Source of the DNA: Mytilus californianus
Lineage: Eukaryota
Reading direction: 5' to 3'
Length of the DNA stretch: 64,000 bases
Assembly: GCF_021869535.1 (NCBI RefSeq)
Contig: NW_026262667.1
Span: 1,612,001 to 1,676,000 of the forward strand
Below are positions 3,466 to 39,710 of the stretch, one piece after another (positions within the stretch are counted from its first letter, which is position 1; every line of letters begins with the position of its first letter). The translations under genes were made by a program, and so were the position numbers. Under the pieces are notes generated by a model. The model did not search any database. It was not told the DNA's origin and worked only from the letters and a program-made list of their open reading frames with translations.

Positions 3466-3740
3466 GACAAGCCTTGACACATATACGCTCCATAGAAGAA
3501 TATCTTGCTGAATGTCTGGTAACACTATAATCTCCCAATGTTGTCTTTGAGTAACTCCCACCATAGGCAAACAGGAAATAAGGACAATACGTGTCGTTGA
3601 ACATAACATCAAACGTGCTATCACCAGTGTTCCTCTTTCTTGTAAAACTGATGGTGGCCATACCATTTGTGTATCTACCCTGTACATCTTTGACATTTTG
3701 GGTTGAATCTACTGTAGGAGTAAACCTTACTGTGGCCCAT
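3466..3740 (-). CDS. Exon 11: remainder of DOMON-2 (WATVRFTPTVD…ISFTRKRNTGD…FLFAYGG…TRHSARY…CVKAC)
   Basis: ORF track 3368-3748; gaacag acceptor, C|gtatgt donor (phase 1, so the gene continues); His at 3514-3512. Confidence 0.9.
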
Positions 3741-18700: not shown

Positions 18701-21700
18701 GTTTATTTAAATTTCTTTCTATCTATTATAAGTTTTAAAATATAAGACAAAAACGCAAAAAAATTGTACAAATCATCATCAAATGGCAATAACTCTAATA
18801 AGGAGTCAACTGACGATTTCAACCATAAGACTTATTTGTACAACTTGTCCTTTTGATCATTTTGCAATTTAAAGTTTCTCTTTATCCATTATAGTTATCA
18901 AGATAATAGGCAAAAATAAAAAAAAAGTGGTAAAATTTGTCATTTAAGGGCAATAACTCCTAAAGGAAATCGTCTGACAGTTTTGACGTATACGGACAAT
19001 TGGTAGAGCTCAACATTCTGAACAATTTTACCCTTTTCAGATTTCCTCTAATTATAACTGTTATCAGAATAATAGACAAAACTTGCATTTTACCCCATAT
19101 GTTCTATTTTTAGCCATGTCGCCATCTTTGTTGGCAGGACACATTTTCTAAACTAAATACCTAATGATGATTGTGGCCAAGTTTGATTTTATTTGGCCCA
19201 GTAGTTTCAGAGGAGAAGATTTTTGATTACGAAAAATTGTTAAAAGTTTACTATAAAGGGCAATTACTCTTTAAGGGGTCAATTGACAATTTTGGTCATG
19301 TTAACTTATTTGTAGATCTTACTTTGCTGAACATTATTGCTGTTTACAGTTTATCTCTATCTATAATAATATTCAAGGTAATTACCAAAAACTGCAAAAT
19401 TTCCTTAAAATTACCAATTCAGGGGCAGCAACTGAATCCAACAACGGGTTGTCTGATTCGTCCGAAAATTTCAGGGCAGATAGATCTTAACCTGATGAAC
19501 ATTTTTACCTCTGTCAGATTTGCTCTTAATGCTTTAGTTTCAGAGATATAAGCCAAAAACTGCATTTCACCCCTATGTTCTATTTTAAGCCATGTCGGCC
19601 ATGTTGGTTGGCAGGCGGGGTCATTGAACATATTTTTTAAACTAAATATCCTAATTATGATTGTGGCCAAGTTTGATTCTATTTGGCCAAGTAGTTTCAG
19701 AGGAGAAGATTTTTGTAAAAGTTAACGACGGACGACGACAGACGACGGACGACAAGTGATGAGAAAAGCTCACTTGGCCCTGTGGGCCAGGTGAGCTAAA
19801 AAACTAAGTCCATGTATCAGTAAAACACGGAAAAATGAAAAAAATATTTTCAAAATTTTGCCCTGGATACTGTATTTTGGTCATAAACAAGTTTCTGTCC
19901 AAATTTCATAAAATTCCATGTAGGTTTGACAAAGTTATTGAAGTCTTAAAAAACTTTAACCACAGACTGAACCTAAATGTTGACGAAGCCGACGACGGAA
20001 TTGAGGATCACTATGTCTCCCTTCTGCGAAATATTTGACAAAAATCAGCTCAAGATTTTCTGGCATTTTGGAACAAAAATAGATTGGGTTAAGCCTTACG
20101 GTACATTTTTGATAGCTCATAATTCTTGTGTAGAATCTGATTAACATTAAACCACATTTGAACATTTCGTATACGTTGTATCTTGGAGTATTTGGTAGTA
20201 AAGTTAAATTGTGATATGATATCTGCCTTACATTGAAATTAATAAATCTGAAATGTAACAAAACTTCTTCTTTAACTACAGAAGCATAATTTCATGGTCA
20301 AACTATCCTTTATACATACACAAGGTAGATCATTGTTTTGTTCACAGTATTCAAATGAATCCACCTTGAACATGAAGTTTATCCTTGATTGCAGGATCAG
20401 TCACACTATCAATCCAACCTCTACTTTGGATAGTTTATACCTTGATAAATTCTCTGGTGAAGTAACATTATGCTTTCATAAGTTTTTTACCCAAAACTTA
20501 AAATTAACAAGTCAATCGCTGTCCGTCATACAATGACATTTTGTTGTTCAGTGAACAGGGAAACCTTAATCTAAATCATTATTTTGGATATATTCTAAAA
20601 AGTTTACATCATAATAAGCTTGTAAACTAAGTATCATGTTGATGTAACTACCTTAAACAGATTCTTTAATTTGATAATGGGAAGAAAGAACAGACAGAGG
20701 GACAGAAAAGTGGTAGACTATCATATGGACAGAGGCACAGACAGGAAAACAATATACCTCTTCTATTATAAGTTGGGCAGAAAAATCTAAACTGCCAAAG
20801 AAATTAAGATAAAATGGACAGTTTTAAGGTATTCTGTATATCATTGTAATGTTCAATTGTGAACCTACTTCTTTGCTGTTTCCTTCAATATCTACATTTA
20901 TATATATATATATTACTTGTTCACCACATTTTACAGTAATGTTATTGAATTTCAAAAAACAAAGAATAAATGACAATGTATTTTACATAATTTTAAATTT
21001 TATACGCTAACATCAATTATTTTGTACTTACTGGAAGAATTTTATGGAAGAGATTGAATTCTGGTGAAAGCTCTGTCTTTTTATAACTTGAAAAATCTGT
21101 AATCTTCTCAGCAACAGCAGATCCTGAAAAAGAGGTATCATTTGATATAAAAAGAAGAATTTAATTAGTCATTTTCTAAATCTTTAATTGACTCTGAAAT
21201 TAGTTTGATGTAAAGAAGTAGAGATGACTTACTGCAATATTGGTCTATGAATAGAAATAATTATTGTCCAACTAAATTACATGTGATATTTGGTTTGCAT
21301 AATATGGTATTCAAACTTCACACAAACTTGTATTCCAGTACGAGTATAATGATATTATATAAAAGCTATAAATATCATCCTATATATGTATGACATATTT
21401 GCCATTGGACATGAAGCAAACAAAATCAACTACTGATTTACTTCTTGCCAACGCTCTGTGTTGCATCAAACCAGGACTTATCAGCCTTAAAGAATGTTCT
21501 CTTTAAAGCAATTTTAGAGTCTATCAAGGATTTACAAAATTACTTTAAAAAGAAAAAGTAATTTGTTTAGTTAAAACATAGATGCCAGTAACATACAAAC
21601 ATAGATACCAGTAACATACAAACATAGATACCAGTAACATACAAACATATCTAAAATATTAAAAGTTGAGAGAATCTGAGATGAAGGCAAATTTCATTGG

Positions 21701-24700: not shown

Positions 24701-27700
24701 TGCAGAATGTTCTAACACAGGGCTCTCTAAGTCTGCTTCCCTGGGTTGCTTAGGATATTGTATAAAAGAGGAAATTTGAATAAAAAGATTTAAAATTAAG
24801 TGACTCTGGAACAATTAATCGGAGGCTCATTAATATACATAAACTGTTGACACAGAGGTATGTATTGCCTATCGGCAGAAAATTCAGAAAAAGACAATCT
24901 GATGGACAGCAACATTGCTAATTAATTCGAAGTTGCTGGACCACGACCTCGGGGGGCAGGGCCTGGAAATAGTCCCGATAGTAATGCAACTTCATAGAAA
25001 ATATCATTGATGTATCACAAGTAGTTCCTATCAAACTAACTTAAGCAGAAAACTTAGCATTGAAAATTGCTTATTATTGAAAGTCACTGGACTGTGACCT
25101 AAGAATCAGGACATCGAAATAGTTGTCAAACTGATAAATACTGATAGTAATGCAACTTTATAGAAAACGTCACTGTTCCTATCAAACTGACTTAAGCAGA
25201 AAACTTAACAATTTTTGACGCCGTAACCTTGGCCCCCACATGAAAAGCAACACCTAATATGTCTCGCCTCCTGCGACTTTCGTTGCAGACAAAACAATAA
25301 GTGCTTGTCACGATCAATGTGTAAAAGTTTGTTAAGACTCAACAAAGCAAAGAAAAGACCGACAAGGGTATACCATAAAAGGTCCATGATAGAAGGAAAA
25401 TAAAATATAATTTTTGTATATCCTACTTTGGTGTGATCAATAACCTAAAAACTGATGTGAGATGTTAATCTGAAATTTTGGGAGTAAATAGCATAAGTAA
25501 ATTTAACCTGTTAAAGTACACTGATTTCCTAAATAAGTTATATAGTTTGTCCACTGACCTCTTTTTACATGGATATCAATCTACTCACTATTGTGCACTA
25601 ATAAAGATCATCCCTTAATTTATATTGTTTGACAGGGCACAGCTGAAATGCTAAACGTAAGGCATAATGTGAAATCAGCCTTTGAGAAGTTATCAACTAA
25701 ACTTACTATGCTGACAATGTCTGCCGTGCCATCCTCTATCACAGAAACACTGTTGTCTGGGATAAAATGTTGTGTCCAGTTGAGTACAAACTCCATGGTT
25801 GTGACAGTCTTCATTGGTCAAACAATCCTCTATAAATAATAATAACTAGACTTTAACGGTGCATAACCTAAAACTTTCACAAAATGTTATAGGGTAGTGT
25901 CCCTATCACATCGCCATGTTCAGTTTACCACAAAATCTGGGTTCAGAACCTCAATTGATATATATCATGAAAAATTCACACCATACATGATAATGAACAT
26001 AAGTACTAAGTTTCAAATTGATGTTAGTACAATTTCATAGTAAACTACCTTTATCAATGAAAGAACCTTTGTGAGCAGGCTCACATACCCCAGGCCCCAC
26101 ATTGTCACTGGGCAAATGTAACTGGGCAAACAAAATCTCACCAGATTCCTAAACCCATAATTCCTACAATAGTCAACTGATAAAAATTCTTGTGGATATG
26201 CACATCTGCATATTATGTCCTTACTATCTACAAAGTTAAATGAAATTCTATTGTTTGGTTTCAGAAAAATTGCACTGACAAATTGTTGCGGTAGTACATG
26301 ATGGTCAAGTTCAAAGGGGCATTACTCGTAGATAAACCAATGAATTATAATTTCCTGTTCTATCACTCATCTACATAATATGTTCTTATTACATATAAAG
26401 TTTTATGAAATTTTGATGAGTGGTTTCAGAGGAGTTGCAATGACAGCCTGTTGCAATAGTATATTTATGCCAAAATTCTAAGTTCAAAGGGCATAACTCC
26501 TAGAAAAAACAATTAATCATAATTTCCTGTCAATATGCACATCTACATAGTATGTCCTTATTATCTACAATGTTTCATGAAATTCTGTATTGTAGTTTCA
26601 GAGTTGAGATGACAAGAACAGGACTGATGGACATACTGAGGGAAGGGTCAAAAACATTATACCCTACACAACAACGTGGGATAATAATTTAACCTAACTT
26701 AAACCATAACTTTGATCTTAACAGTAAACCGTAAAATCTGGGTAAAACCCTAATTTGGCATAGATTTAAAAAAGTTCACATTAATGAATATTTGTACAAA
26801 GTTTCAAATTGATATGACTACAAGTTCATGGTAATAAGATAATGTTAAACCAAAGAGTAACCGGATACAGGAGAGATATGGTGGAAAGGACAGAAATAAT
26901 AACCTCCCTCACTTCTATCCTAGGCAGGCCATAAAAAAGGATTTTGACGCTTTTCTTCACTTCAGTATCATCCATTTACTCAGAACAATTCATTTTGTAA
27001 AAATAATCTGACATGACCTGGTTGTATAACAAAGTTTGATGGCTTATATACATGTAATATTATAATGAGGTTGTACACATCTATTGTCCTGACTTTAACC
27101 AGGGAAAATCAATGAAGTAAGCCAAGATGTGTTGCTGGCTAAAGTATAATTTATGTTTATTTTTAAAGTATAACTTTTTTTGGTGAAGCACCCTCAAATT
27201 TGACCAAGTTTGGGGTTTACTACAAGCCAACATACGAGTTGTATAATATTAATAAGTATATTCCTAACATAATGAATCTCACATTCCTCCATGTATACTG
27301 TGTATACTTTTTACCCTAAAATCTGGGCAATAGTGAAAATATACTGCATGTATTACCAACATTGAAACCAGGCCAAAAGGGCTTTTTATTTTCATTCAGT
27401 CATAAAGATTTAAACAATTTGTCAACACATTGATTCAAACTTTGTAGGACATTGATTTAGGTATAAAATGACATCAACAAAAACAAAACAAAAAGTTTTA
27501 ATAAAATATACACAATGAATCTGTATTTTTCATTAAAAACAAAGTTGAAAGCTGAATGTGACACAAAGTAGCATAATAAAAAGTATTTAAATAACAAGAC
27601 AACTAGTTGGTAAAAAACTACTGACCTTTAAAAGTACACTGTTTTCCAGAGTAAGTCCTATTACACATACACATACTACCCATGTCAGTATGACTACCAC

Positions 27701-30700
27701 ACCGCCTATTTGGTACATTTGCTGAAATAAATCATTGCAGTTATTTAACATGTACCAAAATGACTTATGTAGACATATTTGTTCTAAACTTTTCCACAAA
27801 TAAAATTTATAATCACAATGTAAATATACTGACCATAGTTTATCTAGAATAAAACATACCTTAACAAGAATGTTTCCATAGTACACGGATGCCCCACTCG
27901 CACTATCATTTTCTATGTTCAGTGGACCGTGAAATTGGGGTCAAAACTCTAATTTGGCATTAAAATTAGAAAGATCATGTGTACTAAGTTTCAAGTTGAT
28001 TGGACTTCAACTTCATCAAAAACTACCTTGACCAAAAACTTTAAACCTGAAGCGGGACAGACGGACGAACAGATGGACGAATGAACAGACGCACAAAACG
28101 AAAAACATAATGCCCAACTACTATAGTAGGTGGAGCATAAAAACTGCTAAAGATTCCTATGAAGAAACATATATAACACACCATCAATTGGGATTCTGTG
28201 GATTCATTATCATTCGTGGAAAACTAATTTTCATCAATTTCATGGGTAAAGATAAACCATGAAATTTAGATGTTCAAAAATTGAAAGTACAAATTTTCTA
28301 TAGGCTTGTAATGCAAGCCCAGACAAAACCACGAATTCAAATATCCACGAAAATACAAATTTTCCTCAATCCATGAAAATTGGTAATCATAATAATAAAT
28401 GAATCAACAGTAGTTTGATTACCAAGCTCAACACATTGACAAAGAGAACAACACAGTCACACATTGGTAGTTGATAAAGGGAAAAGAAATGCCTCAGTCT
28501 GAGATGCAAGTCAAAGTTTACATTAGCAACTTCAACTAATCTGCTTATATATATAATGAATTTTATCCACTCTAATCTCTATTTTGGATTCTTGACTACT
28601 TTAAAGTATACTAAACAATAAAAAAACACACCAACTCCATTAATTTCTTTGGAGTGAAAATTTCTATTACATATATCTTTTTAAAAAGTGATTGAAATGA
28701 GTAAAATTTTGAAAAAATAATTCTGTCAAAATGAGGATTTTTATAAAATTTCTTTGACTTTTCAAAATCTCTGTTATCACAGAGATATGCGAGATATGTC
28801 TCTCCGTTTTGTTATTTTGATAGTAAAATGCAAATGTTGAAACTAAAATGGCAATACTTTAACTTGTAAGTTATGCAAAATATTCAAAGTCAAGGCACCA
28901 TTGACTGAAGGTACAGTGCCAAACAATCTACATGGAAATGACATGTGCCAATGCTAATACATATGCATACCAAATATCATTGACCTACCACTAGTAGTTC
29001 CCATAAACTGACCTAATCACAAACTAATACATGTAAACTAAGTAAAATTTTCAAAATCAATAGACCATGACTGAGGGGTGGGGCCAAACAATCTCCATTA
29101 AAATGAGATGTGCCAATGCAAATACAACTGCATACCAAATATCATTGACCTACGACTAGTGGTTCCTCATAAACTGACCTAATCACAAACTAACGCAGGT
29201 AAAGTAAGCAAAAGTTCAAAGTCAATAGACCATGACTGAGGGGTAAGGACTAAATATTATCCATGGAAATGAGATGTGCTAATGCTTATACAACTACATA
29301 CCATTCCCCTATAAACCAACCTAATCCCAAACTAATACATGTAAACCAAGCAAAAGTTTCAAAATCAATTAGACCATAACTGAGAGGGCATGGCCAAACA
29401 ATTTTTTAAAATTTTTAAGGGTTATATTCCTAAAAAAAACACTGATAGCTACATGACTGAATGTGGAAGCTACTTTTAAGTTCCAATTGCACAAAAAAAT
29501 CAGCCTTTGGTAGCATTTAATACTATATTCCAGTGCTGATTGAAGACTTTGTATATATCTTTTTCTTGTGACTTGTTTTTAGAACAATGCAGTGCCACTT
29601 AAACATTGGCTTATACGTGTATTCATATATTTCATTCTTACAATATTCATGTTAAGAGCAATTCAGAGCATAAAAATAAATGACTTTCAAATAAAATAGT
29701 TTGAGGATTTTGTGCTGTTGACAGATGCAACTTTCTCTATTGAAATTATTTACAGCTTGTCTAGAAACCTGGGGCTTTATGGAGCTAATACCATACTCCT
29801 GTGTCCATTTCTGAAGGCTAATTTCTGGTGACCTCTCAATGTCGTTATAACAATAGGTTGCTCATTGATGTATACCAAATATCTCATGTCAATCATAAGT
29901 TCTTTTTTAGGACAACCGTGAATCAGTATAAAGAAGTTGATCCATTTAAAAAAGGCACGGTACAATAATTATCTGGGAATAAAGGTATATATTTTTACTT
30001 AAATGAAAGGATTTTTTTTAAAGTATTGTTAGTAGCTGTCACGATTTGGGGCCATTTATACAGTACAGAAAAAATTGTGATTCAAATTTAAAAAACCCAG
30101 ATGATACAGAAAAATTTCACTAATATATCATACAAAGTCGTGTCATTTTATAGAACATGGATGAGTGGCAAAGAAAAATTCTAATAATTAGTAAAAAAAA
30201 TAAGAAGGTGTGGTTTTATTGCCAATGAGGCAACTCTCGAAAAGGCCAACAAATACTTTTCATTAATCTTTTTTCCATGTAAATAAACAGTACATTTGAA
30301 CTTAAATTAATAATGTTCTGATGTTCCTTGACAGTTTTCAGGATGAGAAAGCCAAAAAAGATAATTGTTGTCCATTTATTAACATTGACATTGACTTTGA
30401 ATTTAGCATTTCTCATAATATATTAATGAAAAAATGGAAGACTTTTCTTCCTATAGTAAATCGCAACCAAGTATAAGAACTATCCATCAAATCATTCCTT
30501 TAAAATAAAAAGACTTTAACAATCAAAGTAAAAATTATTCAGTAAAACATTATGTGTCTTAAACATTTTGAAATAGACATTAATTAACTAGTTTAAAACC
30601 GTATTTAAAATATTATTTCACTATTTCTTAATGTAAATTATGTACAGATTTTCTTGTACATTTACAAGAACACAAATAATCTTTTATATTCTAGATTTGG

Positions 30701-33700
30701 AGATGATAATAGATTATTACAAAACAATTGATTGTGCATCCAAAATCTTGGAATTGATTTTTTTTTTCCTGAAGTTATTGATATAAATAATCAAAGATTA
30801 AAACCGGGGATATGACTTATTCATAGACAATTATGTCATTCACTACATATATGGAACTATCTTGAATAATTGTCAAACTGTTATGTCAGACTGCAGTTTA
30901 AATAAAATGTAACCCCAATACCATCCAAAACATATGTGAATCTTGTTTCCTTTAAAATAGAAAAAAAAGAAATAAAAGCAAATACTGATTATTTTTTGTA
31001 TCATACAGGGACAGCCATTTATGAGTGTACAACTGATGGTATAACAAAAGAAAGGGCTGTATCGTAAGACATTTTGTTTATATTCAATAAATAGTTGCAA
31101 TGTGTAATTTGGTTTTTAATGTACTCCAAATATTTAGCTATTATACGTAAACATAAGTTCATCTCAAATTCACTTAAGCAGGTGATCCTTGCTTTATTTT
31201 CTTGTGCACTTTGGGATTTTGTATCATGAATTGATAAACCAGATTCTCTTGTTTCCATTTATGGATCTTTTCAGAGTTTTTTTCTGTTTTCCTCATACCT
31301 GTAGTATGGAGAAATTTTTTTTTCATTTGTATATAAGTTGCACATCAAGTTTGCATTTATTTTAAGATCTCCTTTTCAGAGAATTACAGTCTTATACTAG
31401 GCAGTGACATTAGTACCTCCAAATGTATATAGTTAGTTACTAAGTATTGTTAGTCAAGTAAAGAGGAAGACATGATTTACTAAAGGGTTCACAGTGAATC
31501 TATGTAACCAGGTTCAATATGAATCTAATGGTTCAATGTGAATCCATTGTTTGCCATTTCATCAGTACAAATCTAATCAGTAAAGAAAAGACAAAGGGAT
31601 GAGCAATAGCATTGCTTTTACAGAACTTCAACCATCTGACAGTTAGTTTTGTGCATTTACCAATTTTAACAAAAAGAACTTGACCATGTTGACAGAGACA
31701 ACTTACATGGTAGTATATTGACGTCTGCACAGGAATAGAAGATATAATCTCCACAGTTCCCTGTTGTCCATTCTCCAGCCTGTCTTATCAGCTGAATGGA
31801 ACAGTTGCGACATTCTGTATTCGGTAAAGTTATTTGATGACTTAAAATTCTGCAAACAAAAAGAAGAAAATTGTCTTAAACAAACCACACATTAAATACG
31901 GAGGTAAAAGGTTCCCATGACTTTATTTAATTTGGATGTTTAACTATTAAATATTTTTACTCTTTAGCATACAAATAGTTTGGTAAGTAAAAAACCATTG
32001 CACATAATGTCATGTATTATTAGATAACTGTCGTATAAGGTCCAAAACCACATATGGTTTGTTATTCATTGCTTTTAAAATTCTTCTGTGATGAGATACT
32101 GTTGAAATAATAAGTCAATATATCATTACAATGTATTGGTGCTTCCCTTCACTTGATCCTAAATTCCTAGATTTATAATTGCAAATTCTTAGCTACGTTC
32201 TTGGGGAACTTTGTAAGTTCCATTGTCAGAGGAATAGCTTAATGGGCATAGGGTTCTGGTTTGATGATGCAGTGGTAATGGAAGGAAAATTATGCTCCAC
32301 AGTTACATACAAAATTTCTAGTTGGTTTATTTACAAGCATGGAAAATTAATGTTTAGTATAATTTTCAGCCAAAATGTTTAAACATGCAAGGGGGAAACA
32401 ATGAAATGCTATATATTTAATAACAGTACAATGTATTATAATATATACTTTATAAAAAAAAAATACTTAACATTTTCAAATAGTCTTCAACCTTAAAAAC
32501 ATTTATTTACTTACGTTGGATCATTTGCACCAGTATAACGGCCATTTTGTGTTGATGTAAACACCTGGACCTCTTGTTCATTATGATCTAATAACGCTAT
32601 TCTGTAACCTCCCTATAAAGGAAAAAATACAGATATCTTTTATTAATAAATTAACCTACAATGATAACTATGGTATCATTATGAGTGAGAATTTGATATC
32701 ACTTGATATCAACTTGAGTTATTTAATTTCAATATAATAATAAATGAGCCTTTGGCTTTTTTAAGTTGTTAAACTTTTTTCTCCCATGGTAAAAGAGACT
32801 TCGGATTTCGCAAATGTCGCTTCAAATATAAGTCTGCCAAAGGAATTGAGAAAATTGTGTCAGGAACTAAGACTACTATTCAATGAGATATTTTCAAGCT
32901 TTTAATATGCTTCCTTATGCAATCAAATTTGACATAAAGATTATTTCCAGGTGAGCATGTGAGTGTATTGAAAATCACAAATCTCTGATACCAAGGGTCC
33001 ATTGTGACCTTTGAGTCCTCATACACCTAACGAATAGCCATTGGAAATGTTGCATTAACACATTTTTCTAATCATTTATTCACATCACCATACATTGTGA
33101 TACAAAAATATCACTTCATGCAGGAAAAAGATAACAGTCCACAACCAATATAAGAAAATGAGGGGTATATACTGAAGGTATCAATAAGTAGTAAGGAGAG
33201 TTCTTTTGATCATATTTGCTGAAACTATGATTCAAGAAGCCAAGCAAAACTAGCTTTTCCACATTGTACTTATTACTTCTAGAAATTGTCATACTGATGA
33301 CTGTAAAGATGTATGTAATCATTTAGTACGATAATCATATCATATATCAAAAATTTTCAGTAGATACAGTGTGACAACATACTCTCTAAAAATTCATATA
33401 TAGGAACAAAAGCTGTGTTAAGGGTTTTGTTTGAACTAAAAACTTAATCGCTACAAAATCATTTATATTTTACATTAAAATCTGTAAGTTCTTTTTAAAT
33501 ATTAAGAATATGAACATGATGAAGATGTCAAGGTAGAAAAATGGGATACTTAAATATTTATTCTAAAATAACGCCATGTAAATATTTATAAGAGAGGAGC
33601 TGTTCATATAGACATACATGACTGAATTAAGTTATTTAGTTGGTTCATGCTCTTAAATATTTTGTGAGAAAGTGAACCATGATTTGAAGATCAACCAAAA

Positions 33701-36700
33701 TCTTCTATCTTAACAAAAGTACACAAAAGTGGCCTTTTCATGATGTGATTGCAACATTTATTCATTTTATTGTGATGCTAGACTGGACAGCATGTTATAT
33801 TTTTTTGTATTTTCTTAACATTTATAGAGACATAAAAGGAAATCTACATTTTATAAAAAAAATAAAACTTACATATTTGAATATATATCTGTTATTACAC
33901 AGACCAAATAAAGCTTTATTTAAATCCCCTCTTTCAAACAAGGGTTGAGTAACCTATTGCCCCTAGAAATGTTTCTGTTGCAATATCACCTCTAATTACA
34001 CATATTAGTCTCCCAATTCTAATGCATCAAATTCCCCCTATAATTTTTCATTTGGAACAGAGCATGTTGAAGCTTTTCTGAACAAATTTATAAACAAAAC
34101 AAACTAAAATATCTTTTTAAGCTGTCATGACTGTATTTAAAATTTTTGTTTTCTCTTCTTTAAAGCAAATATTGTTTAATTAGATTATAGATCTATGAGT
34201 AAACAATGAGTATAAAGCCTAGGCTTATTACAAGACCAGTTCATCAGGGAAACAAACAAAAGATTTGAGAACCTAATAAAGTAAACTTAAGGTAGTTCTG
34301 CATCATTTCATGTACCTTTATTGTTACATTTCCAATGTAAGTGAAGATTTTTTTTTTTTTTTAAATGTTGAAGTACTAGTATTGAACACAAAATTGAGCC
34401 ATGGTAAGCTATAAAGCTATTTGTGTCTTCAATATTCTAATCGTGTTAAAGGTACATGTCTGCCTCAATTTAGAATAAAATTGAGAATGGAAATGGGGAA
34501 TGTGTCAAAGAGACAACAGCCCGACCAAAGAGCAGAAAACAGCCAAAGGCCACCAATGGGTCTTCAACACACCGAGAAAAACCTGCACCCGGAGGCGGGC
34601 TTCAGCTGGCCCCTAAATAAAAATGTGTACTCAGTTCAGTGAAAATGGAAGGTTATAAATATAGTATAAAAAATATTTGTCTGTCATTACCTCTGTGGCT
34701 TATATGAACTATACTTACTGGCATATTTTCTAACATAAATAACAATAACTAATTTATCATTTCATTTAAAAAAAAATTGAGAAACACCATCTACATAAAC
34801 TTGAAGGATCAATTCAATTAACTGAATAAAATTATTATTTATCTTATAAGAAGTCACAGTATGGGAATGATCAACATATATTATTTACAAAAAAATAGAT
34901 ACCACTATGTAAAAAAAGATATTCAACATTGCTGATACAAGAAAAAAATCATGGAAAAATAATATTCCTAGCTGATATTTCATCAAAATGATACACACTG
35001 TTCTGTTTGTAATTTAACCAAGTGAAATTTGAAAGAGGGTTTTACTGATGTTCCATTTCAAGCAGTTATTTAAGCGTTAACTATCATTTTTGACTTTTAA
35101 GTGCTGCCAATCCATTTCAGAAATCTAATAAAGATTTCCCAGGAAAGACACTTGGGCATGTACCCCCTTTTTCTTCTTTATATATTTAAGGAAAAAACTT
35201 TGTTTAATATGTTTTGACTCTTAAATATCATTATTATTTCAGAGGTGGATTTAGGGGGCAGCCAGGGAGCCTGGCCCCCTTATGAAGCTTCATTTATGAT
35301 AAATACAGACTTTTACAAGTATCACTCCAAACACTGGCTTGCCAGGGGGCCCTCAAAATCCTGGATCCACACCTGTATTTTACATTAACTGTATTCTATG
35401 AGTGATGTCCCTCTACTCTTATTTTATTTTATGGAAAATAAGAGTAGATGCCAGCCAGCTAGGGGCATCACTAAGTTACTTAGTAAGTACACCGCAAGAG
35501 CAGACCCTGGACTGGTCTGCCACGGGTATTATTCTATTTGGATTTTTATATATATGCTTTATTGATACAGAAAGGTGTCAAAGCAAAATCAAAATAGGCT
35601 TCCAAGACTTATACTTATGTGGACTATTCTGAGATGGTCTGAGATTACTATTGCCAGAGACATATAATACAATGTATTATATGTCTATATAATACAATGT
35701 ATCATATGTCTGCTATTGCACAGGACTACTGAACCACCTGCTTTTTTACTGTCTCTTCCTTTTTAATATGTAAGGGGGCGTTCCTTGTCGTTCATAATGT
35801 CAGTCAAAATAATGACTTCATAAACGAAGCATAATGTATAGTATATACCGACTTATAATGCGATGTCTTGCATCCTGTAAATAGTTGGTCGAAGTATGAC
35901 TGATAGTAGACCGGAAATCTATTTACTAATTTAAAAATAAAAATCGGTAGTTACTTTCCGGATGCACTTATTTTATATTTATTTTGATAGAACGGTGTGT
36001 AGAACTGATCGGGATCATGAAATTGATCACTTATTTCGTATGAGTAATTGATGAAATTGTTGTCCAAGTTATGATTTTGTCGGAGATAAAGTTGTTATGA
36101 TCAATCGGTTAACCGAGGATTTAAGACAAAAGATATTCGGCCTGATAAGCATGAAACTGAGCTGGACCCCATTACATAGTATTTTATAAATTGGTAAAGC
36201 AATAAAACAATATGATTTGAAATTCTTTTACCACTTTTGCGCTACTTCATGCTCGTCTATTTTTAGAGAATCCACGGATTCTATCATGGATTCGCGAAAA
36301 ATACAAAAGCGTGTGCGTCAAATGTTCTTCTTGCACAATGTTTCGTCAATACAGTTATTTTAAAGCTAGTTTGATTGACTATCCATCGCAGAATACAATA
36401 TTACCAGGCCCGGTTTAATGATTATTTGAATTAAAAAAATAAACATTATACCTCCAACATTATGCAACTATCTTTACTGCACGTGATGGTGCTTAATGCT
36501 TCAAGGTCGTTAATTCTTAATGCTTCAAGGTCGTTAATTCTTAATGCGTCAAGGTCGTTAATTCTTAATGCTTCAAGGTCGTTTACGTTAATTCTTAATG
36601 CTTCAAGGTCGATAATTCTTAATGCGTCAAGGTCGATAATTCTTAATGCATCAAGGTCGTTAATTCATAATGCTTCAAGGTCGTTAATTCATAAAACTAC

Positions 36701-39700
36701 ATGTTCAATCAAAATATACGAAGAAAACATTTCTTCGTATGGTAAAGTTCAATATGATAATGATATTTTAGTGGCCCACAAAATGTCTATACTATATGAT
36801 CCTATATTCCAAGCTCTAAATCACCCTGAAACCTAAAGAGTTGTGAATAAAGAGCCATAGAGCCAACTTTCTTTGCTTTCTTTTACATTATTTCACACTC
36901 TGACCAATTGATTCATACTATCTGCATGGTAAATTATAAATGTTAATCAAAGAAGGCATAAGAAGGACAAGACATAAGAATGACATTCTTAACCTAAATC
37001 TAAACCCTGCAAGATGTTTGTCTTTCAGAAACAAATTGTTAAAATTTACAAAATAAAAATCAAATTGTCTTCAAAAGCAATGTAGAGAGCGTTTTTTTTT
37101 TTATTGATATATGTATAATTGTTGACACTCTTTCAATAAAATTGAGAATGGAAATGGGGAATGTGTCAAAGAGACAACGACCCGACCATAGAGCAGACAA
37201 CAACCGAAGGCCACCAATGGGTCTTCAATGCAGCGAGAAACTCCCGCACCCGGAGGCGTCCTTCAGCTGGCCCTTAAACAAATATGTATACTAGTTCAGT
37301 GATAATGGACGTCATACTAAACTCCAAATTATACACAGGAAACTAATATTAAAAAATGATACAAGATTAACAAAGGCCAGAGGCTCCTGACTTGGGACAG
37401 GCGCAAAAATGCGGCGGGGTTAAACATGTCAAGTATACTATTAAAGTTTTTTTATATTCATATTCCATTAGCTTTTAAAAACTTGTGTATTTTAATATTT
37501 TAATAAAAATAACTGTATCAGTATAACTTTTTGTTGGCAATTTGGTTTTTTTGCAATACCAAAATGGTTACTCGGCTTATTGACATATAAGTCTGTTGAA
37601 ATTTTGAATTTGTTTACAAAAAGGAAATTGGTCCTTTAACCGGGAATTATCTACGTTGTAACCACATTCTCCTCGTGTGAACAACGGACTCGTGCCCGAT
37701 TAACGGATAAACCAAATGGACGTGATATAGCTTTGCTTAGAGGTTTGGTTTATTCCCTCTCCTGATAATCTATGTATACCTTGGAACTAGGCAGAGTTTA
37801 TCCTGAAACATTTGCAAGGCGTTTTAACTTTGTGTATACTGAGCAATATGTATCCCATAAAGTTCAATGGTAAGTTCTGTGACATTGTTGTCCTGTATGC
37901 AGCCGGATTAGTGTTTACAGTTTCTCCTGGTCGCCATTCGTTTGAAGTTTCAATAAATTTGACACTGACCAATGAGTATTAGAACTCAAAAATCGTCGTT
38001 TTGGGGTTGTTTTTTTTTTCTCGTCGGATCAGAATATGCCATTTTTAGGGACCAACCATCCACTATTAAACATTTTTTACATAGATTTAATGGGCTCCAT
38101 GTTGTCATGTTTTTCATTTAACCGAAACAAAATGAAGAATCTTTGTTAAAGATCTTCCATTCATTGTTTTGCAAAAGTATGAATTAGTTTGGCTTAACGA
38201 CTCCAGACACAGAGATGACGTCGGAAACTTGACTGTTTCATGCAGATATGAAAATGTGTACACACGACGGAACTTACTCATGTCGTTAGATTTCTCGTTT
38301 TAATTGTTTTACATTTTTCATTTCGGGGCCTTTTGTAGCTTACTATGCGATATGAGTTTTGTTCATTGTTGAAGGCCGACCTATAGTTGTTAACTTCTAT
38401 GTGATTTGGTCTGTGGTGGAATGTTGTCTCATTGGCAATCATACCACATCTTCTCATTTTTAAATTTACCCCAGCAGATGAAGAAACAAACTTCTTCTAT
38501 AGCCATTTGAGACCGCATGGAATAAACAAAAAAAAAATGATTGCTGAGTCGTTGAAACAATTCCGAGAAGAACATTTATGAGACCAGACTAAAATGACAA
38601 ATACTGAACAAACCTTATGTGGATAAGCTGTATGCCACTGGACATTTATCGTTTCTTCAGTTAATAGATCGGTTACGGGTCCAAGGCCTGTTGATTGTAA
38701 AGCATAACGCATATATATATAATGCAAACAGTTACAAAATAAACAAATTGAAAATAAAAAAGATATAAACAATAATAGCAAATATTCTGCATATGCTGGC
38801 TTTAAGCCACATTCGTAGCCTTATCAATGGAAATAATTGTATTGCTGAATTTCACTAAATGGACATTTGCACATGAATTTGGACCCTTTCATTGTTAATC
38901 TAGATAAAGAACAGCACAAAGAGCGTTTTTCAATTTATAATATATATTCACATACCAGGGGTGGGGTGATCTCCAACTACCCTGTATGGTACACATACAT
39001 ACCTGATTGTATTCCCCATGAAAAATCAGTTAAAGCTCAAGATTCTATATATATAATGGCCTTTCAAGTCTTCCCAGAGGCCAGAGATTCACAGGATTTG
39101 GATTTGACTTTTGTTAAGAAATTAAAAAAAAAACAAAAAAAACTTTGTTTTATTAGTTTTTTTTATGACTGTAGGCAATCTACTAGTAATTAAAATTTTG
39201 ATCTATCGTCATATAAGTAAAACGAAATCAGAGATCTATATTTTATTTAGATTGATCTGTATACGTATGACACGTTTTACTATTAGATATATTCAAACTT
39301 TTTAATTTCATTTATATATACAGTTTAATTGAAGCCTTAGACTTCATATCATATAAAAATTAAAATGATGAAAAAATATGGATTAAAAGCTTATCATAAT
39401 AACTTGTTCGACAAGTCATTCATTGTCAGACAAAATGTTTTTGTTTTGAATACAACGGTTTAAATATAGAATTTAAATACCCGTTTTATACATTACAGGG
39501 AGTTGGCATTATTTTCTATTGTATAATATAGTTACAAGCGGCAATATATTATTTACCTTTTGGAATTCCACATGGTGCAATAGTCCTGATATTATCCATG
39601 AAATCAAAAGCATATTTCCGTGCTGGTGGAAATTTCAAAGCAATGTGTCCGGCAACACCCGAAAATGTACATAGGGTGAAAACAATCAATGAAGTAATTC

Positions 39701-39710
39701 CAGTTACCAT
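3466..39710 (-). CDS. Spliced gene (11 exons in window, 3' end beyond window): secreted LPMO-like (His-brace) / 2xEGF / DOMON protein
   Basis: Exons 39710-39557, 38687-38614, 32612-32515, 31849-31707, 27721-27626, 25829-25707, 21123-21032, 15196-15127, 5724-5432, 4983-4925 and 3740-3466 total 1477 nt (492 codons + 1 nt). All junctions are GT-AG, phases match at all 10 introns, and the joined frame has no stop. Confidence 0.9.
4925..4983 (-). CDS. Exon 10: PATDVYMGWIDNGQAVVSD (DOMON-2)
   Basis: tctttcag acceptor, CG|gtatga donor, phase 0 to 2; M-P-x-T-D-V-x-x-G-W and D-R DOMON motifs. Confidence 0.9.
5432..5724 (-). CDS. Exon 9: FRSGCQYFP + Pro/Glu linker + start of DOMON-2 (…WLAIGFSDDKTM)
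   Basis: ORF track 5381-5749; attttag acceptor, ATG|gtaaga donor, phase 1 to 0; linker built of short GAACCT/GAGCCA repeats. Confidence 0.9.
6222..7282 (+). mobile_element. hAT-type MITE (1061 bp)
   Basis: 14-bp TIR CAAGGCTTCCAAAA / TTTTGGAAGCCCTG (1 mismatch); perfect 8-bp TSD GTCTCTAC at 6214-6221 and 7283-7290; no coding capacity. Confidence 0.9.
7940..8230 (+). mobile_element. Penelope-like reverse transcriptase fragment (degenerate)
   Basis: ORF 7950-8171 contains YRDDGFMVF…FF…AN…LKFTYE, typical of the PLE RT C-terminal region (pattern recall). Confidence 0.6.
8540..10310 (+). mobile_element. Pearl/HINE-like element, family B
   Basis: Starts CAAGAGTGCACACGCTGAAATGTCTCGCC; tandem cores AACCATGAAAATGAGGTCAAGGTCA; ends (GCC)n + hairpin + GCTCGACAAAAA; inverted copy at 62880-63947. 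Confidence 0.75.
13083..13463. mobile_element. MITE with ~24-bp terminal inverted repeats
   Basis: AGGTTGGGGAAGATCCTCATAAAT / ATTTATGAGGATCTTCCCCAACCT are exact reverse complements; TSD not clear. Confidence 0.75.
15127..15196 (-). CDS. Exon 8: NDEIEMVMRVKSTTWIGIGWRPS (DOMON-1 N-terminal strands)
   Basis: gttttag acceptor, A|gtaagt donor, phase 0 to 1; DOMON-type E-I-E...W-x-G-x-G-W motif. Confidence 0.87.
16897..18044 (+). mobile_element. Family A element (nested), with ~500-bp internal tandem duplication
   Basis: ACAAGAGGCTCTCAAGAGCC … CCGGTGAGCTAAAAA; the block starting near 16935 is repeated near 17435. Confidence 0.8.
18230..19802 (+). mobile_element. Family A-related element (nested)
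   Basis: ACTAGAGGCTC…GTCGCTCA … (GACG)n … GGCCAGGTGAGCTAAAAA. Confidence 0.75.
21032..21123 (-). CDS. Exon 7: SAVAEKITDFSSYKKTELSPEFNLFHKILP (start of DOMON-1)
   Basis: ctttttcag acceptor, CCA|gtaagt donor, phase 1 to 0. Confidence 0.82.
21574..21650. repeat. 23-bp minisatellite, ~3 copies
   Basis: CATAGATACCAGTAACATACAAA repeated in tandem. Confidence 0.9.
21858..24564. repeat. 68-bp satellite array, ~40 monomers, inside intron 6 of the minus-strand gene
   Basis: Monomer ATTGAGTAGATACTGAGTAAACATCCAATAAAGTTAACGAGTTATCATGAGATGTACCTGGAAATATC; period measured from GAGTAAACAT at 22081, 22149 and 22217. Confidence 0.97.
25707..25829 (-). CDS. Exon 6: EGF-like module 2 (DCLTNEDCHNHGVCTQLDTTFYPRQQCFCDRGWHGRHCQH)
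   Basis: Six Cys in EGF spacing with CxCxxGWxGxxC; ttatag acceptor and A|gtaagt donor, phase 1 to 1. Confidence 0.9.
27626..27721 (-). CDS. Exon 5: EGF-like module 1 (4 Cys; NVPNRRCGSHTDMGSMCMCNRTYSGKQCTFK)
   Basis: tttcag acceptor, G|gtcagt donor, phase 1 to 1; C-x-C-x5-G-x2-C signature. Confidence 0.85.
27863..28143 (+). mobile_element. Short pearl/HINE-like element, family D
   Basis: AACAAGAATG…GATGCCCC start, (GACG/GACA)n tract, 3' hairpin ATAATGCCC…GGAGCATAAAAA; related cores at ~25850-26930. Confidence 0.6.
28194..28412. mobile_element. Degenerate MITE with TIRs
   Basis: CTGTGGATTCATT…AATTTTCAT / CCATGAAAATT…AATGAATCAACAGTA imperfect inverted ends. Confidence 0.55.
28885..29400. repeat. 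~160-bp tandem core repeats (about 3 copies) of a non-autonomous element
   Basis: Recurrent CCATGACTGAGGGG…GAGATGTGCCAATGC…AAACTGACCTAATCACAAACTAA units. Confidence 0.65.
31707..31849 (-). CDS. Exon 4: ILSHQITLPNTECRNCSIQLIRQAGEWTTGNCGDYIFYSCADVNILP (end of LPMO-like domain)
   Basis: ttgcag acceptor, T|gtaagt donor, phase 2 to 1; CxxC and F-Y-S-C-A-D-V motifs. Confidence 0.9.
32515..32612 (-). CDS. Exon 3: GGYRIALLDHNEQEVQVFTSTQNGRYTGANDP
   Basis: Pyrimidine tract + tag acceptor, AC|gtaagt donor, phase 0 to 2. Confidence 0.87.
34478..34645. mobile_element. Interspersed repeat family E (SINE-like), partial copy
   Basis: ATTGAGAATGGAAATGGGGAATGTGTCAAAGAGACAAC… near-identical to 37140-37428; inverted partial copy at ~2770-2890. 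Confidence 0.7.
35240..35375. mobile_element. Small GC-rich MITE
   Basis: CAGAGGTGGATTTAG / CTGGATCCACACCTG imperfect TIRs. Confidence 0.55.
35655..35712. other. CAGAGACATATA mini-palindrome (58 bp) with 7-bp TSD CTATTGC
   Basis: TSD at 35648-35654 and 35713-35719; internal duplicated filler; right arm lacks 2 bp. Confidence 0.8.
36490..36692. repeat. 24-bp minisatellite, ~8 copies
   Basis: TTAATGCTTCAAGGTCGTTAATTC units; explains the LILNASRS ORF. Confidence 0.92.
37140..37428. mobile_element. Interspersed repeat family E (SINE-like), longer copy
   Basis: Shared with 34478. Ends …CCTGACTTGGGACAGGCGC…GCGGGGTTAAACATG, resembling a conserved mollusc SINE central domain in reverse (recall); no tRNA head seen. 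Confidence 0.65.
38290..38460 (+). mobile_element. SINE-like 3' fragment
   Basis: …GTTGTCTCATTGGCAATCATACCACATCTT; related tails at ~55380-55420 (+), ~30200-30240 (-) and ~5160-5250. Confidence 0.6.
38614..38687 (-). CDS. Exon 2: GLGPVTDLLTEETINVQWHTAYPHK (second brace His)
   Basis: caacag acceptor, AAG|gtttgt donor, phase 1 to 0; His of PHK at 38619-38617. Confidence 0.88.
39557..39710 (-). CDS. Exon 1: signal peptide + mature N-terminal His (MVTGITSLIVFTLCTFSGVAG|HIALKFPPARKYAFDFMDNIRTIAPCGIPK)
   Basis: aaaATGG start; hydrophobic 21-aa leader ending V-A-G; His codon at 39647-39645; donor G|gtaaat, phase 1. Confidence 0.88.

What the first reader, a model, noticed from the sequence alone, without database searches (positions are those of the whole stretch)
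31707..39710. Secreted animal protein with an LPMO-like copper histidine brace, hidden across four small exons
Seen: splicing exons 1-4 gives a 21-aa signal peptide followed immediately by His (H-I-A-L-K-F-P-P-A-R…P-C-G). A second His sits in W-H-T-A-Y-P-H-K-G-G-Y, followed by a CxxC, Q-x-x-E-W and a terminal F-Y-S-C-A-D-V. Established: lytic polysaccharide monooxygenases (AA9/10/11/15) need His as residue 1 of the mature chain, a second His in an H-x-G-type loop, and a Tyr/Phe three residues before the C-A-D strand. Inference: mature His1, His54 and Phe125 form a copper site, with the Gln/Glu as second-sphere residues. The N-terminus differs from the AA15 HGRL..PP.R pattern and is more reminiscent of bacterial SCE4755-type monooxygenase-like proteins, so this may be an unclassified LPMO-like family. 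I recall uncharacterised arthropod proteins with a similar N-terminus but cannot verify that. A fifth, apparently unpaired Cys (TGNCG) lies just before the Phe strand.
Basis: partly seen in the sequence, partly recalled or inferred. Interest (0 to 1): 0.85.

Follow-up and report, generated by a model that had tools for sequence, protein, structure and literature searches.

The report
Copper-enzyme-like head of mussel nahoda gene
The four small exons are real and encode a copper-site domain shaped like a sugar-cutting LPMO enzyme, but it is the first part of a much larger, widely conserved and unstudied animal cell-surface protein (called nahoda in insects) that also carries probable haem domains, not a small secreted protein.

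Summary
On the minus strand, exons 39710-39557, 38687-38614, 32612-32515 and 31849-31707 splice in frame with GT-AG sites. They encode a 21-aa signal peptide followed by a 135-aa domain that starts with His.

- **Conservation:** in 72 homologues His1 is invariant, His54 is kept in 69 of 72, and position 125 is Phe or Tyr in 68 of 72.
- **Fold:** an alignment-based AlphaFold2 model (pLDDT 95) has an LPMO fold. The closest structure is insect AA15 (5MSZ, Z 13.2). The family's sequence profile also hits 5MSZ best (E 3e-10).
- **The domain is not the whole protein:** RNA contigs join 31707 to a further exon at 27721-27626. An 11-exon open frame of 492 aa runs on to 3466 and probably beyond the window. 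It adds two EGF modules, a Pro/Glu-rich linker and a DOMON domain with conserved Met and His.
- **Relatives:** they are 800-3000-aa proteins built as LPMO-like, EGF, DOMON, SEA and a transmembrane segment. They occur from sponges to insects, where they are named nahoda. None has been functionally studied.

The best reading is a cell-surface copper histidine-brace domain, probably supplied with electrons by its own haem-type DOMON domains. The substrate is unknown. This is a new variant of a known kind. Earlier scan notes reported a different AA15-like gene in this mussel genome, not this one.

The parts
39648..39710 (-). Start codon (39710-39708) and 21-aa signal peptide ending V-A-G
   Evidence: Sequence read. 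In 72 homologues position -1 is A, G, S or C in 70 and position -3 is small or aliphatic. His1 sits at a median precursor position of 21. SignalP was not available.
39557..39647 (-). Rest of exon 1: mature His1 (codon 39647-39645), the H-x-x-L-x-F-P-P-A-R motif, the conserved D-F-x-D-N-x-R-T loop and Cys26
   Evidence: His1 is present in 71 of 71, Pro7 in 72 of 72, Arg10 in 69 of 72 and Cys26 in 72 of 72. The donor is GTAAAT.
38614..38687 (-). Exon 2, ending in W-H-T-A-Y-P-H-K; second copper ligand His54 (codon 38619-38617)
   Evidence: His54 is kept in 69 of 72 and aligns with His91 of TdAA15A. His49 is kept in only 37 of 72. The splice sites are AG and GT.
32515..32612 (-). Exon 3 (G-G-Y-R-I-A-L-L ... 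N-D-P-T), the core beta strands
   Evidence: Gly56 is invariant. The donor is GTAAGT. The junction 32515|31849 is seen in contigs of runs X1, X2 and X3.
31707..31849 (-). Exon 4: Cys101-x-x-Cys104, Gln111, Glu114-Trp, a bivalve-specific loop with Cys120, axial Phe125 (codon 31740-31738) and Cys128-Ala-Asp130. It is not the last exon.
   Evidence: Conservation is. Phe125 aligns with Tyr184 of TdAA15A. The donor GTAAGT at 31706 is used: run X3 contig 15 joins 31707 to 27721.
27626..27721 (-). Exon 5: first EGF-like module (C-G-x7-C-x-C-x5-G-x2-C)
   Evidence: An RNA contig covers 27626-27721 and is joined to exon 4. The Cys pattern matches the EGF region of P0001 and P0002.
25707..25829 (-). Exon 6: second EGF-like module (teneurin-type)
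   Evidence: tblastn with P0002 residues 190-232 gives E 1e-14 to 1e-16 at 53% identity. The phase fits exon 5. Homologues hit Pfam EGF_Teneurin and EGF_TEN here.
21032..21123 (-). Exon 7, conserved region after the EGF pair
   Evidence: tblastn with P0004 residues 224-255 gives 50% identity. Splice sites and phase fit.
15127..15196 (-). Exon 8 (E-I-E-M-V-M-R-V-K-S-T-T-W-I-G-I-G-W-R-P), conserved strand pair that resembles the start of a DOMON
   Evidence: tblastn gives 50-60% identity to P0001, P0002, P0004 and P0006.
5432..5724 (-). Exon 9: Pro/Glu-rich linker and the first half of a DOMON domain, ending in G-F-S-D-D-K-T-M (Met codon 5434-5432)
   Evidence: tblastn to the DOMON domains of P0004 and P0006 gives E about 1e-11. 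Met is conserved in 78 of 80 family DOMONs. In a homologue (P0004) the same Met aligns with the haem ligand Met65 of cellobiose dehydrogenase.
4925..4983 (-). Exon 10: middle of the DOMON domain
   Evidence: tblastn to P0004 and P0002. Splice sites and phase fit.
3466..3740 (-). Exon 11: second half of the DOMON domain with conserved His (codon 3514-3512). The frame is still open at its GT donor, so the gene continues.
   Evidence: tblastn gives E 1e-15 to 1e-17. His is conserved in 76 of 80. The assembled frame of 492 aa has no stop.

Best explanation
Positions 39710-31707 (minus strand) are the 5' end of a large gene. It is the mussel member of the nahoda-type family of animal cell-surface glycoproteins.

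Exons 1-4 encode a signal peptide and a compact 135-aa domain with an LPMO fold. Its free N-terminal His1, together with His54 and the axial Phe125, forms a copper histidine brace.

The same polypeptide continues into two EGF modules, a Pro/Glu-rich linker and at least one DOMON domain. That DOMON keeps the Met and His that ligate haem b in cytochrome-type DOMONs. In relatives the chain goes on to further DOMONs, a SEA domain and a membrane anchor.

- **Shown:** the gene structure, the fold, the conservation of the brace, and the fusion to EGF and DOMON.
- **Inferred:** the domain binds Cu. The DOMON cytochromes pass single electrons to the Cu(II) centre, as the cytochrome domain of cellobiose dehydrogenase does for fungal LPMOs. 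The reduced copper then acts at the cell surface, either oxidising an extracellular polymer such as chitin or handling copper itself. The substrate is unknown.
For: **Gene model**
- An 11-exon, 492-aa open frame with GT-AG splice sites throughout.
- The exon 3-4 and 4-5 junctions appear in RNA contigs. Stranded reads lie on the strand expected for a minus-strand gene.

**Family**
- 781 homologues were found. The best are the N-termini of 300-2975-aa proteins.
- Pfam finds EGF, 1-4 DOMON domains and (in several) SEA in mollusc, annelid, arthropod, nematode, hemichordate and tardigrade proteins.
- Insect orthologues carry the name nahoda.

**Copper site**
- His1 is present in 71 of 71 homologues and His54 in 69 of 72. 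Position 125 is Phe in 56 and Tyr in 12 of 72. Glu114 is Glu in 54 and Asp in 12.
- The family profile aligns His54 with His91 and Phe125 with Tyr184 of TdAA15A at E 3e-10.

**Fold**
- The AlphaFold2 model has pLDDT 95.3 and pTM 0.90.
- All 50 top Foldseek hits are LPMOs.
- VIA-align gives Z 13.2 over all 135 residues to 5MSZ, starting at residue 1 of both.

**Electron relay**
- DOMON Met is kept in 78 of 80 copies and His in 76 of 80.
- The Met aligns with the haem ligand Met65 of cellobiose dehydrogenase and with the Met of the CcPDH cytochrome domain.
- A green-alga homologue carries the LPMO-like domain, three DOMONs and a cytochrome b561 in one protein.
Against: - No copper, haem or activity data exist for any member.
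- The DOMON profile is most similar overall to the haem-free DOMON of human dopamine beta-hydroxylase, which has Leu where this family has the Met. Haem binding therefore rests on two conserved residues only.
- The domain lacks the long L2 surface region of most polysaccharide-active LPMOs. It also scores above the Pfam cut-off for the non-catalytic BIM1-like family.
- The C-terminus (SEA, membrane anchor) lies outside the window and is assumed from homologues.
- The alga fusion with b561 is a single gene model.
- RNA depth was low (1-3 reads deep). Two contigs run from exon 3 into intron 2 instead of splicing to exon 2.
Confidence: 0.7

Rival explanations
1. The copper domain is not a catalyst. 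It acts as a copper-handling module like fungal Bim1/X325: it captures Cu(II) at the cell surface, the DOMON cytochromes reduce it, and Cu(I) is handed to a CTR-type importer.
For: - The window protein passes the Pfam gathering score for BIM1-like_dom (32.7 bits against 27). 42 of 71 family members match that model at E<=0.01.
- The domain is small and tethered to the cell surface, as Bim1 is. LaX325 is a structural match at Z 10.9.
- DOMON-cytochrome proteins act as metal reductases in other systems (a title seen and general knowledge).
Against: - The family profile finds no X325 chain among PDB sequences even at E<=10, but finds AA15 at 3e-10.
- AA15, AA16 and AA10 structures score higher than X325.
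- More members match LPMO_10 (47 of 71) than BIM1-like.
- There is no GPI-anchor position directly after the domain.
- The Asp that supplies the fourth copper ligand in X325 (PMC10952591) could not be located or excluded.
Confidence: 0.25
2. One reading: a stand-alone, roughly 135-aa secreted LPMO-like protein made from four exons and ending at F-Y-S-C-A-D-V-N-I-L-P, or by read-through 13 residues later at the stop at 31669.
For: - Read-through past 31707 meets a stop after 13 codons, so an unspliced or alternative 3' end could give a short product.
- Some database homologues are short (159-230 aa).
Against: - The contig of run X3 splices 31707 to 27721, and the X2 contig leaves the stretch at 31707.
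- The frame continues through EGF and DOMON exons that match homologues in order.
- The closest relatives are long, and the Geodia short form has a longer isoform in the same cluster.
Confidence: 0.04
3. A classical chitin-active AA15 LPMO whose extra domains serve only to anchor it.
For: - AA15 is the closest solved relative by sequence profile and by structure.
- An axial Phe is typical of chitin-active LPMOs (PMC5823890).
- Molluscs make chitin.
Against: - Identity is only 22% and about 60 AA15 residues are missing.
- The domain has 4 conserved Cys instead of the 10 reported for AA15 (PMC5823890).
- Tyr52 stands where AA15 and AA10 have the active-site Ala89.
- The LPMO_10 score is below the cut-off for this protein (17.4 against 23).
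- A profile phylogeny placed DOMON/EGF/LPMO_10 proteins on an early branch outside the named families (PMC6950343).
Confidence: 0.2
4. A metal-free binding or adhesion domain that keeps only the LPMO fold, like the 'Arg-AA15' noted elsewhere in this genome.
For: - LPMO-fold proteins without copper ligands exist in this genome according to an earlier scan note.
- EGF and SEA modules are typical of adhesion proteins.
Against: Both histidines and the axial aromatic residue are conserved almost without exception from sponge to insect. A metal-free fold would not require this.
Confidence: 0.05

Closest known systems
AA15 lytic polysaccharide monooxygenases (TdAA15A, PDB 5MSZ)
   Same: - Animal origin and beta-sandwich LPMO fold (Z 13.2, all 135 residues aligned).
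- N-terminal H-x-x-L-x-x-P-P-x-R skeleton.
- Second His in a P-H-x-G context (aligned with His91).
- C-x-x-C before the penultimate strand.
- Axial aromatic residue three positions before C-A-D (aligned with Tyr184).
   Different: - About 60 residues shorter, at 22% identity.
- 4 conserved Cys rather than 10.
- Tyr, Ile or Phe at the position of Ala89.
- Fused to EGF, DOMON, SEA and a membrane anchor rather than free or fused to carbohydrate-binding modules.
- No activity is known.
Fungal X325 / Bim1 copper-binding LPMO-like proteins (Pfam PF20238, PDB 6IBH/6IBI)
   Same: - Small LPMO-like domain with a histidine brace, tethered to the cell surface.
- The Pfam model is passed by the window protein.
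- Structural match at Z 10.9.
   Different: - No match by sequence profile to the solved X325 chains.
- The tether is a long multi-domain stalk, not a GPI anchor.
- The Asp ligand was not verified.
- Animal and algal distribution rather than fungal.
Cellobiose dehydrogenase cytochrome domain (AA8) acting on AA9 LPMOs
   Same: A haem-b DOMON-fold cytochrome with Met/His ligation supplies electrons to a copper histidine brace. The family's DOMONs keep the Met (aligned with Met65) and a C-terminal His.
   Different: - Here the putative cytochrome and the copper domain are on one polypeptide.
- No flavin dehydrogenase domain is present, so the electron source is unknown. One algal homologue has a cytochrome b561.
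- Haem binding is untested.
Drosophila nahoda and 'DOMON-like domain-containing protein nahoda' of other insects
   Same: Same family and domain order. The insect N-domains align over the full length with His1, His54 and Phe/Tyr125, and scallop proteins link them to the mussel gene.
   Different: - Different phylum, at about 44% identity in the N-domain.
- In the papers searched, nahoda appears only in gene lists, with no functional study.
- I did not see the D. melanogaster sequence itself. The link rests on NCBI and UniProt naming of orthologues.

Membership tests
LPMO superfamily (histidine-brace copper beta-sandwich) | His as residue 1 of the mature chain, directly after the signal peptide | tested here: met
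   - The leader is hydrophobic and 21 aa long, ending V-A-G before His.
- His is invariant in 71 of 71 homologues.
- Position -1 is A, G, S or C in 70 of 72, and the median His position is 21.
- Cleavage was not predicted with SignalP and has not been measured.
LPMO superfamily (histidine-brace copper beta-sandwich) | Second copper-ligand His, and an axial Phe or Tyr on the last strand | tested here: met
   - His54 is kept in 69 of 72 and aligns with His91 of TdAA15A.
- Position 125 is Phe in 56, Tyr in 12 and Leu in 3, and aligns with Tyr184.
LPMO superfamily (histidine-brace copper beta-sandwich) | LPMO beta-sandwich fold | tested here: met
   - The model has pLDDT 95.3.
- The top 50 Foldseek hits are all LPMOs.
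- VIA-align Z scores against LPMOs of AA15, AA16, AA10, AA13, AA11 and AA9 range from 13.2 down to 8.8.
LPMO superfamily (histidine-brace copper beta-sandwich) | Copper binding and oxidative cleavage of a polysaccharide | not testable with these tools
   This needs protein expression, EPR or ITC, and product analysis.
CAZy AA15 | Clear sequence relatedness to characterised AA15 catalytic domains | tested here: inconclusive
   - The family profile hits 5MSZ at E 3e-10 (43 bits) over 106 of 133 positions.
- The structural alignment shows 22% identity.
- The window protein scores below the LPMO_10 cut-off (17.4 against 23).
- dbCAN was not available.
CAZy AA15 | Ten conserved Cys (five disulfides) and the active-site Ala89 | tested here: not met
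   - Only Cys26, Cys101, Cys104 and Cys128 are conserved.
- Tyr52 aligns with Ala89.
- The AA15 features are taken from PMC5823890.
X325 / Bim1 (Pfam PF20238) | Pfam gathering score | tested here: met
   - The precursor scores 32.7 bits and the mature domain 30.6 bits, against a cut-off of 27.
- Several close homologues fall below the cut-off.
X325 / Bim1 (Pfam PF20238) | Asp carboxylate as the fourth equatorial copper ligand | not testable with these tools
   The feature is described in PMC10952591. No residue-level structural alignment or model coordinates were available.
X325 / Bim1 (Pfam PF20238) | GPI anchor directly following the domain | tested here: not met
   The domain is followed by EGF and DOMON exons.
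nahoda-type LPMO-like/EGF/DOMON cell-surface proteins | N-terminal LPMO-like domain followed by two EGF modules | tested here: met
   - The N-domain matches bivalve homologues at E 4e-47 and 2e-45.
- The EGF exons lie at 27721-27626 and 25829-25707, with an RNA junction to exon 4.
nahoda-type LPMO-like/EGF/DOMON cell-surface proteins | One or more DOMON domains with conserved Met and His | tested here: met
   Exons 9-11 encode a complete DOMON with Met381 and His477 of the partial model.
nahoda-type LPMO-like/EGF/DOMON cell-surface proteins | C-terminal SEA domain and membrane anchor | not testable with these tools
   The frame is still open at 3466 and no further exon was found in the window. 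The rest probably lies beyond the left edge.

The most novel reading that the evidence does not exclude
Animals from sponges to insects, and some green algae, carry a self-contained extracellular redox machine. In it, a copper histidine-brace (LPMO-type) head is wired in cis to a string of haem-b DOMON cytochromes on a cell-surface stalk. In one alga this string connects to a transmembrane cytochrome b561, so cytosolic reductant could drive copper chemistry outside the cell. That would be the first natural LPMO-cytochrome fusion and would give the uncharacterised gene nahoda a biochemical role.
Probability: 0.35. Interest if true: 0.8.

Novelty: new variant of a known kind. Interest (0 to 1): 0.62.

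Why it matters
What LPMO-type copper proteins do in animals, and what feeds them electrons in vivo, are open questions.

- This gene family puts a fully conserved histidine brace and probable cytochrome domains on one cell-surface protein, across most animal phyla. The electron-donor question could therefore be tested with a single recombinant protein or with a fly mutant (nahoda).
- The family is already in databases as 'uncharacterised', 'DOMON domain-containing' or 'chitin-binding type-4' proteins. One LPMO phylogeny paper mentioned it in passing (PMC6950343). The new content is the interpretation, not the existence of the family.
- For genome annotation, no full-length mussel protein of this family was found among 5.8 billion clustered proteins in the length range searched. 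The gene may therefore be missing or fragmented in mussel gene sets.

Tried and rejected
- **Single exons against Pfam:** nothing was found. The domain is only recognisable once spliced.
- **Word-indexed search with the 156-aa product:** blank. This was an artefact of the length filter, because the relatives are 5-20 times longer.
- **phmmer of the single protein against PDB sequences:** only a chance capsid hit. The family profile was needed.
- **AlphaFold2 without an alignment:** pLDDT 50, unusable. It was replaced by the alignment-based model.
- **Paralogues in the window:** none.
- **Reading F-Y-S-C-A-D-V as the C-terminus, or using the read-through stop at 31669:** rejected on RNA junction evidence.
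- **His49 (W-H-T) as the second ligand:** rejected, because it is conserved in only 37 of 72 homologues.
- **Assignment to X325/Bim1 on the Pfam hit alone:** rejected, because AA15 is closer by profile and by structure.
- **Papers on nahoda or on LPMO-DOMON fusions:** only gene lists and one passing remark. Two 'DOMON' hits in C. elegans papers were author names.
- **Exons below 3466, searched with four homologues:** none found.
- **Rfam on the highly covered intronic repeats:** no match.
Full report
**1. What is in the sequence**

The feature lies on the minus strand. Reading the DNA and assembling it gives four exons:

| Exon | Coordinates |
|---|---|
| 1 | 39710-39557 |
| 2 | 38687-38614 |
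| 3 | 32612-32515 |
| 4 | 31849-31707 |

- Every acceptor ends in AG, every donor starts with GT (two are GTAAGT), and the phases fit.
- The product begins with a 21-residue hydrophobic leader ending V-A-G, followed by His.
- The window has no N runs and no paralogue of the gene.

**2. It is not a four-exon gene**

The donor GTAAGT after 31707 is used.

- When RNA assemblies and raw RNA reads were laid on 27000-32999, a contig of run X3 joined 32515|31849 and 31707|27721 and covered a new exon at 27721-27626.
- Contigs of X1 and X2 also joined 32515|31849.
- Raw stranded reads of X21 lay on the exons with the first mate on the plus strand only, as expected for a minus-strand RNA. Depth was low (1-3).
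- The new exon encodes an EGF-like module.

Guided by homologues, I assembled an 11-exon frame of 492 codons without a stop, with GT-AG throughout. The further exons are:

| Exon | Coordinates |
|---|---|
| 6 | 25829-25707 |
| 7 | 21123-21032 |
| 8 | 15196-15127 |
| 9 | 5724-5432 |
| 10 | 4983-4925 |
| 11 | 3740-3466 |

- The frame is still open at the last donor. No further exon was found in the window, so the gene probably runs off the left edge.
- Six differences between the window and RNA contigs inside exons are four synonymous and two amino-acid changes, V91I and M170K.

**3. Relatives**

- The word-indexed search with the 156-aa product was blank because of its length filter.
- The exhaustive phmmer search found 781 proteins at E<=1e-3 and 15 at E<=1e-30. 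The best hits are the N-termini of proteins of 300 to 2975 residues.
- Pfam on these shows teneurin-type EGF modules, one to four DOMON domains and, in several, a SEA domain. The scallop sequence also shows a hydrophobic membrane segment near its C-terminus.
- Sources include:
  - scallops, pearl oyster, limpets, abalone and Biomphalaria;
  - annelids, a priapulid, a horsehair worm, nematodes and tardigrades;
  - horseshoe crab, mites, crustaceans and many insects;
  - two hemichordates and a sponge;
  - the green algae Bryopsis and Chara.
- The names given are 'uncharacterized protein', 'DOMON domain-containing', 'EGF-like domain-containing', 'Chitin-binding type-4 domain-containing', 'Cell surface glycoprotein 1' and, in insects, 'DOMON-like domain-containing protein nahoda' or 'Nahoda protein'.
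- In the paper library, nahoda occurs only in gene lists.
- No mussel protein appeared in the length range searched.

**4. The N-terminal domain**

*Conservation.* The table below summarises 72 aligned homologues.

| Residue (mature numbering) | Conservation |
|---|---|
| His1 | present in all 71 that reach it |
| Pro7, Cys26, Gly56, Cys128 | invariant |
| His54 | 69 of 72 |
| Cys101, Cys104 | 70 of 72 each |
| Position 125 | Phe 56, Tyr 12, Leu 3 |
| Glu114 | Glu 54, Asp 12 |
| Gln111 | 41 of 72 |
| His49 | only 37 of 72, so it is not the ligand |

- The residue before His1 is A, G, S or C in 70 of 72 sequences. His1 sits at a median precursor position of 21. Both fit signal-peptidase cleavage directly before His.
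- The 'fifth Cys' (T-G-N-C-G) lies in a four-residue insertion that 48 of 72 lack. A Cys in this loop is present in all four bivalve sequences seen.

*Pfam.*
- The window protein scores 32.7 bits on BIM1-like_dom (cut-off 27) and 17.4 on LPMO_10 (cut-off 23).
- Across the family, 47 of 71 match LPMO_10 and 42 of 71 match BIM1-like at E<=0.01. The family therefore sits between the two models.

*Comparison with solved structures by sequence.*
- The family profile finds TdAA15A (5MSZ) at E 3e-10. It then finds AA13, AA10 and AA9 weakly, and no X325 chain.
- In that alignment His54 pairs with His91, the C-x-x-C with the AA15 C-x-x-C, and Phe125 with Tyr184. His91 and Tyr184 are the copper ligand and the axial residue described for TdAA15A (PMC5823890).
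- Tyr52 stands where AA15 has Ala89.

*Structure prediction.*
- A single-sequence AlphaFold2 run was poor (pLDDT 50). With the 71-sequence alignment the model reached pLDDT 95.3 and pTM 0.90.
- All 50 best Foldseek matches in the PDB are LPMOs.
- VIA-align Z scores:

| Structure | Z |
|---|---|
| 5MSZ (AA15), all 135 residues aligned, residue 1 on residue 1 | 13.2 |
| AA16 | 11.9 |
| several AA10 | about 11.5 |
| AA13 | 11.3 |
| AA11 | 11.2 |
| X325 | 10.9 |

- I could not obtain coordinates, so the His-His distance is inferred, not measured.

**5. The DOMON part**

- The window's exons 9-11 encode a complete DOMON.
- In 80 DOMON copies from 42 family proteins, the Met in G-F-S-x4-M is kept in 78 and a His near the C-terminus in 76.
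- A limpet family DOMON aligns best with the cytochrome domain of Phanerochaete cellobiose dehydrogenase. Its Met falls on Met65, and the M65H mutant entry 1PL3 shows His at that column.
- That Met65 and His163 are the haem ligands there is established knowledge (Hallberg et al. 2000), not tested here.
- The family DOMON profile is, overall, most similar to the haem-free DOMON of human dopamine beta-hydroxylase (E 1e-13), which has Leu at the Met column. It also matches the cytochrome domains of CcPDH and CDH with the Met aligned.
- Haem binding is therefore a reasonable inference, not a result.
- The Bryopsis homologue carries the LPMO-like domain, three DOMONs and a cytochrome b561. That is the arrangement expected for an ascorbate-driven transmembrane electron path, but it is a single gene model.

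**6. How it most likely works**

- *Shown:* a conserved, expressed gene whose product starts with an LPMO-fold domain carrying a complete histidine-brace signature, followed in cis by EGF and DOMON modules.
- *Inferred:*
  - Signal-peptide cleavage frees His1.
  - His1 (amine and ring N) and His54 bind Cu above Phe125.
  - The DOMON cytochromes reduce Cu(II) to Cu(I).
  - The reduced site reacts with O2 or H2O2 at the cell surface.
- *Open:* whether the target is a polysaccharide (chitin is the obvious candidate in molluscs and arthropods, but sponges, nematodes and algae also have the family), or whether the domain only captures and reduces copper as fungal Bim1 is thought to do.
- I give the identity of the domain and gene about 0.85, the cis electron relay about 0.35-0.4, and catalytic polysaccharide oxidation about 0.2-0.3.

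**7. Comparison with known families**

- It works like an LPMO-type copper site, and its nearest relative is AA15.
- It fails two AA15 hallmarks (the ten Cys and Ala89) and is about 60 residues shorter.
- It passes the Pfam BIM1-like cut-off but lacks the GPI context. It is further from solved X325 than from AA15.
- It clearly belongs to the nahoda-type family by N-domain, EGF pair and DOMON. The SEA domain and membrane anchor lie outside the window.

**8. Verdict**

The gene model and the 'small secreted protein' framing are wrong, and the family is not unknown to databases.
- This is a new variant of a known kind: an AA15-related histidine-brace domain built into a conserved animal cell-surface protein with probable cytochrome domains.
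- Interest is moderate to high because the arrangement makes the in vivo electron-supply question for animal LPMO-like proteins directly testable.
- The scan had earlier noted a different AA15-like gene on another piece of this genome. Nothing had been noted at this place.

Noticed in passing
window 32613-32725 (minus strand, 3' end of intron 2): RNA contigs of runs X2 and X3 continue from exon 3 across its acceptor into the intron (to 32725 and 32671) instead of joining exon 2. The X1 contig leaves the stretch at the acceptor. This could be a retained intron, pre-mRNA, or an alternative start that would give a product without the signal peptide and His1. An in-frame TAG lies directly upstream of exon 3.
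   Followed up: partly
window 28875-29303, and 27860-28390: A 165-bp tandem repeat (2.6 copies, 83% matches) and a neighbouring repeat in intron 4 show summed contig depths of 1e4-1e5 in RNA assemblies of several runs, with many internal rearranged joints. They look like an abundant, transcribed satellite or mobile element. There is no Rfam match.
   Followed up: partly
window 36492-36694: A 24-bp tandem array (8.2 copies, also seen with periods of 78 and 102) lies in intron 2. It gives a spurious 124-aa ORF of repeated L-N-A-S-R-S-L-I.
   Followed up: no
window 34421-34642 and 37142-37294 (plus strand): Two similar ORF-like stretches (M-E-M-G-N-V-S-K-R-Q...P-P-M-G-L-Q) lie about 2.7 kb apart in intron 2. 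They are probably two copies of a dispersed repeat.
   Followed up: no
window 15127-15196 and 5687-5724; P0002 residues 240-300 and about 880-1010: The conserved stretch after the EGF pair (E-I-E-x-V-x-x-V-x-x-x-x-W-x-G-x-G-W-R-P...C-Q-x-F-P) looks like the first strands of a DBH-type DOMON. In the scallop protein it seems to be completed only after the inserted linker and cytochrome-type DOMONs, which suggests a nested domain arrangement.
   Followed up: no
P0079 (3869 aa, metagenome) and P0112 (Bryopsis, 1293 aa): P0079 contains nine internal matches to the middle of the domain, so these are copies that cannot have a free N-terminal His. P0112 fuses the domain with three DOMONs and a cytochrome b561.
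   Followed up: partly
window 46001-50000: G+C rises to 0.38-0.40 with a strong AT skew (+0.20 to +0.22) compared with about 0.31 elsewhere. This may be another gene or a mobile element upstream of the gene studied.
   Followed up: no
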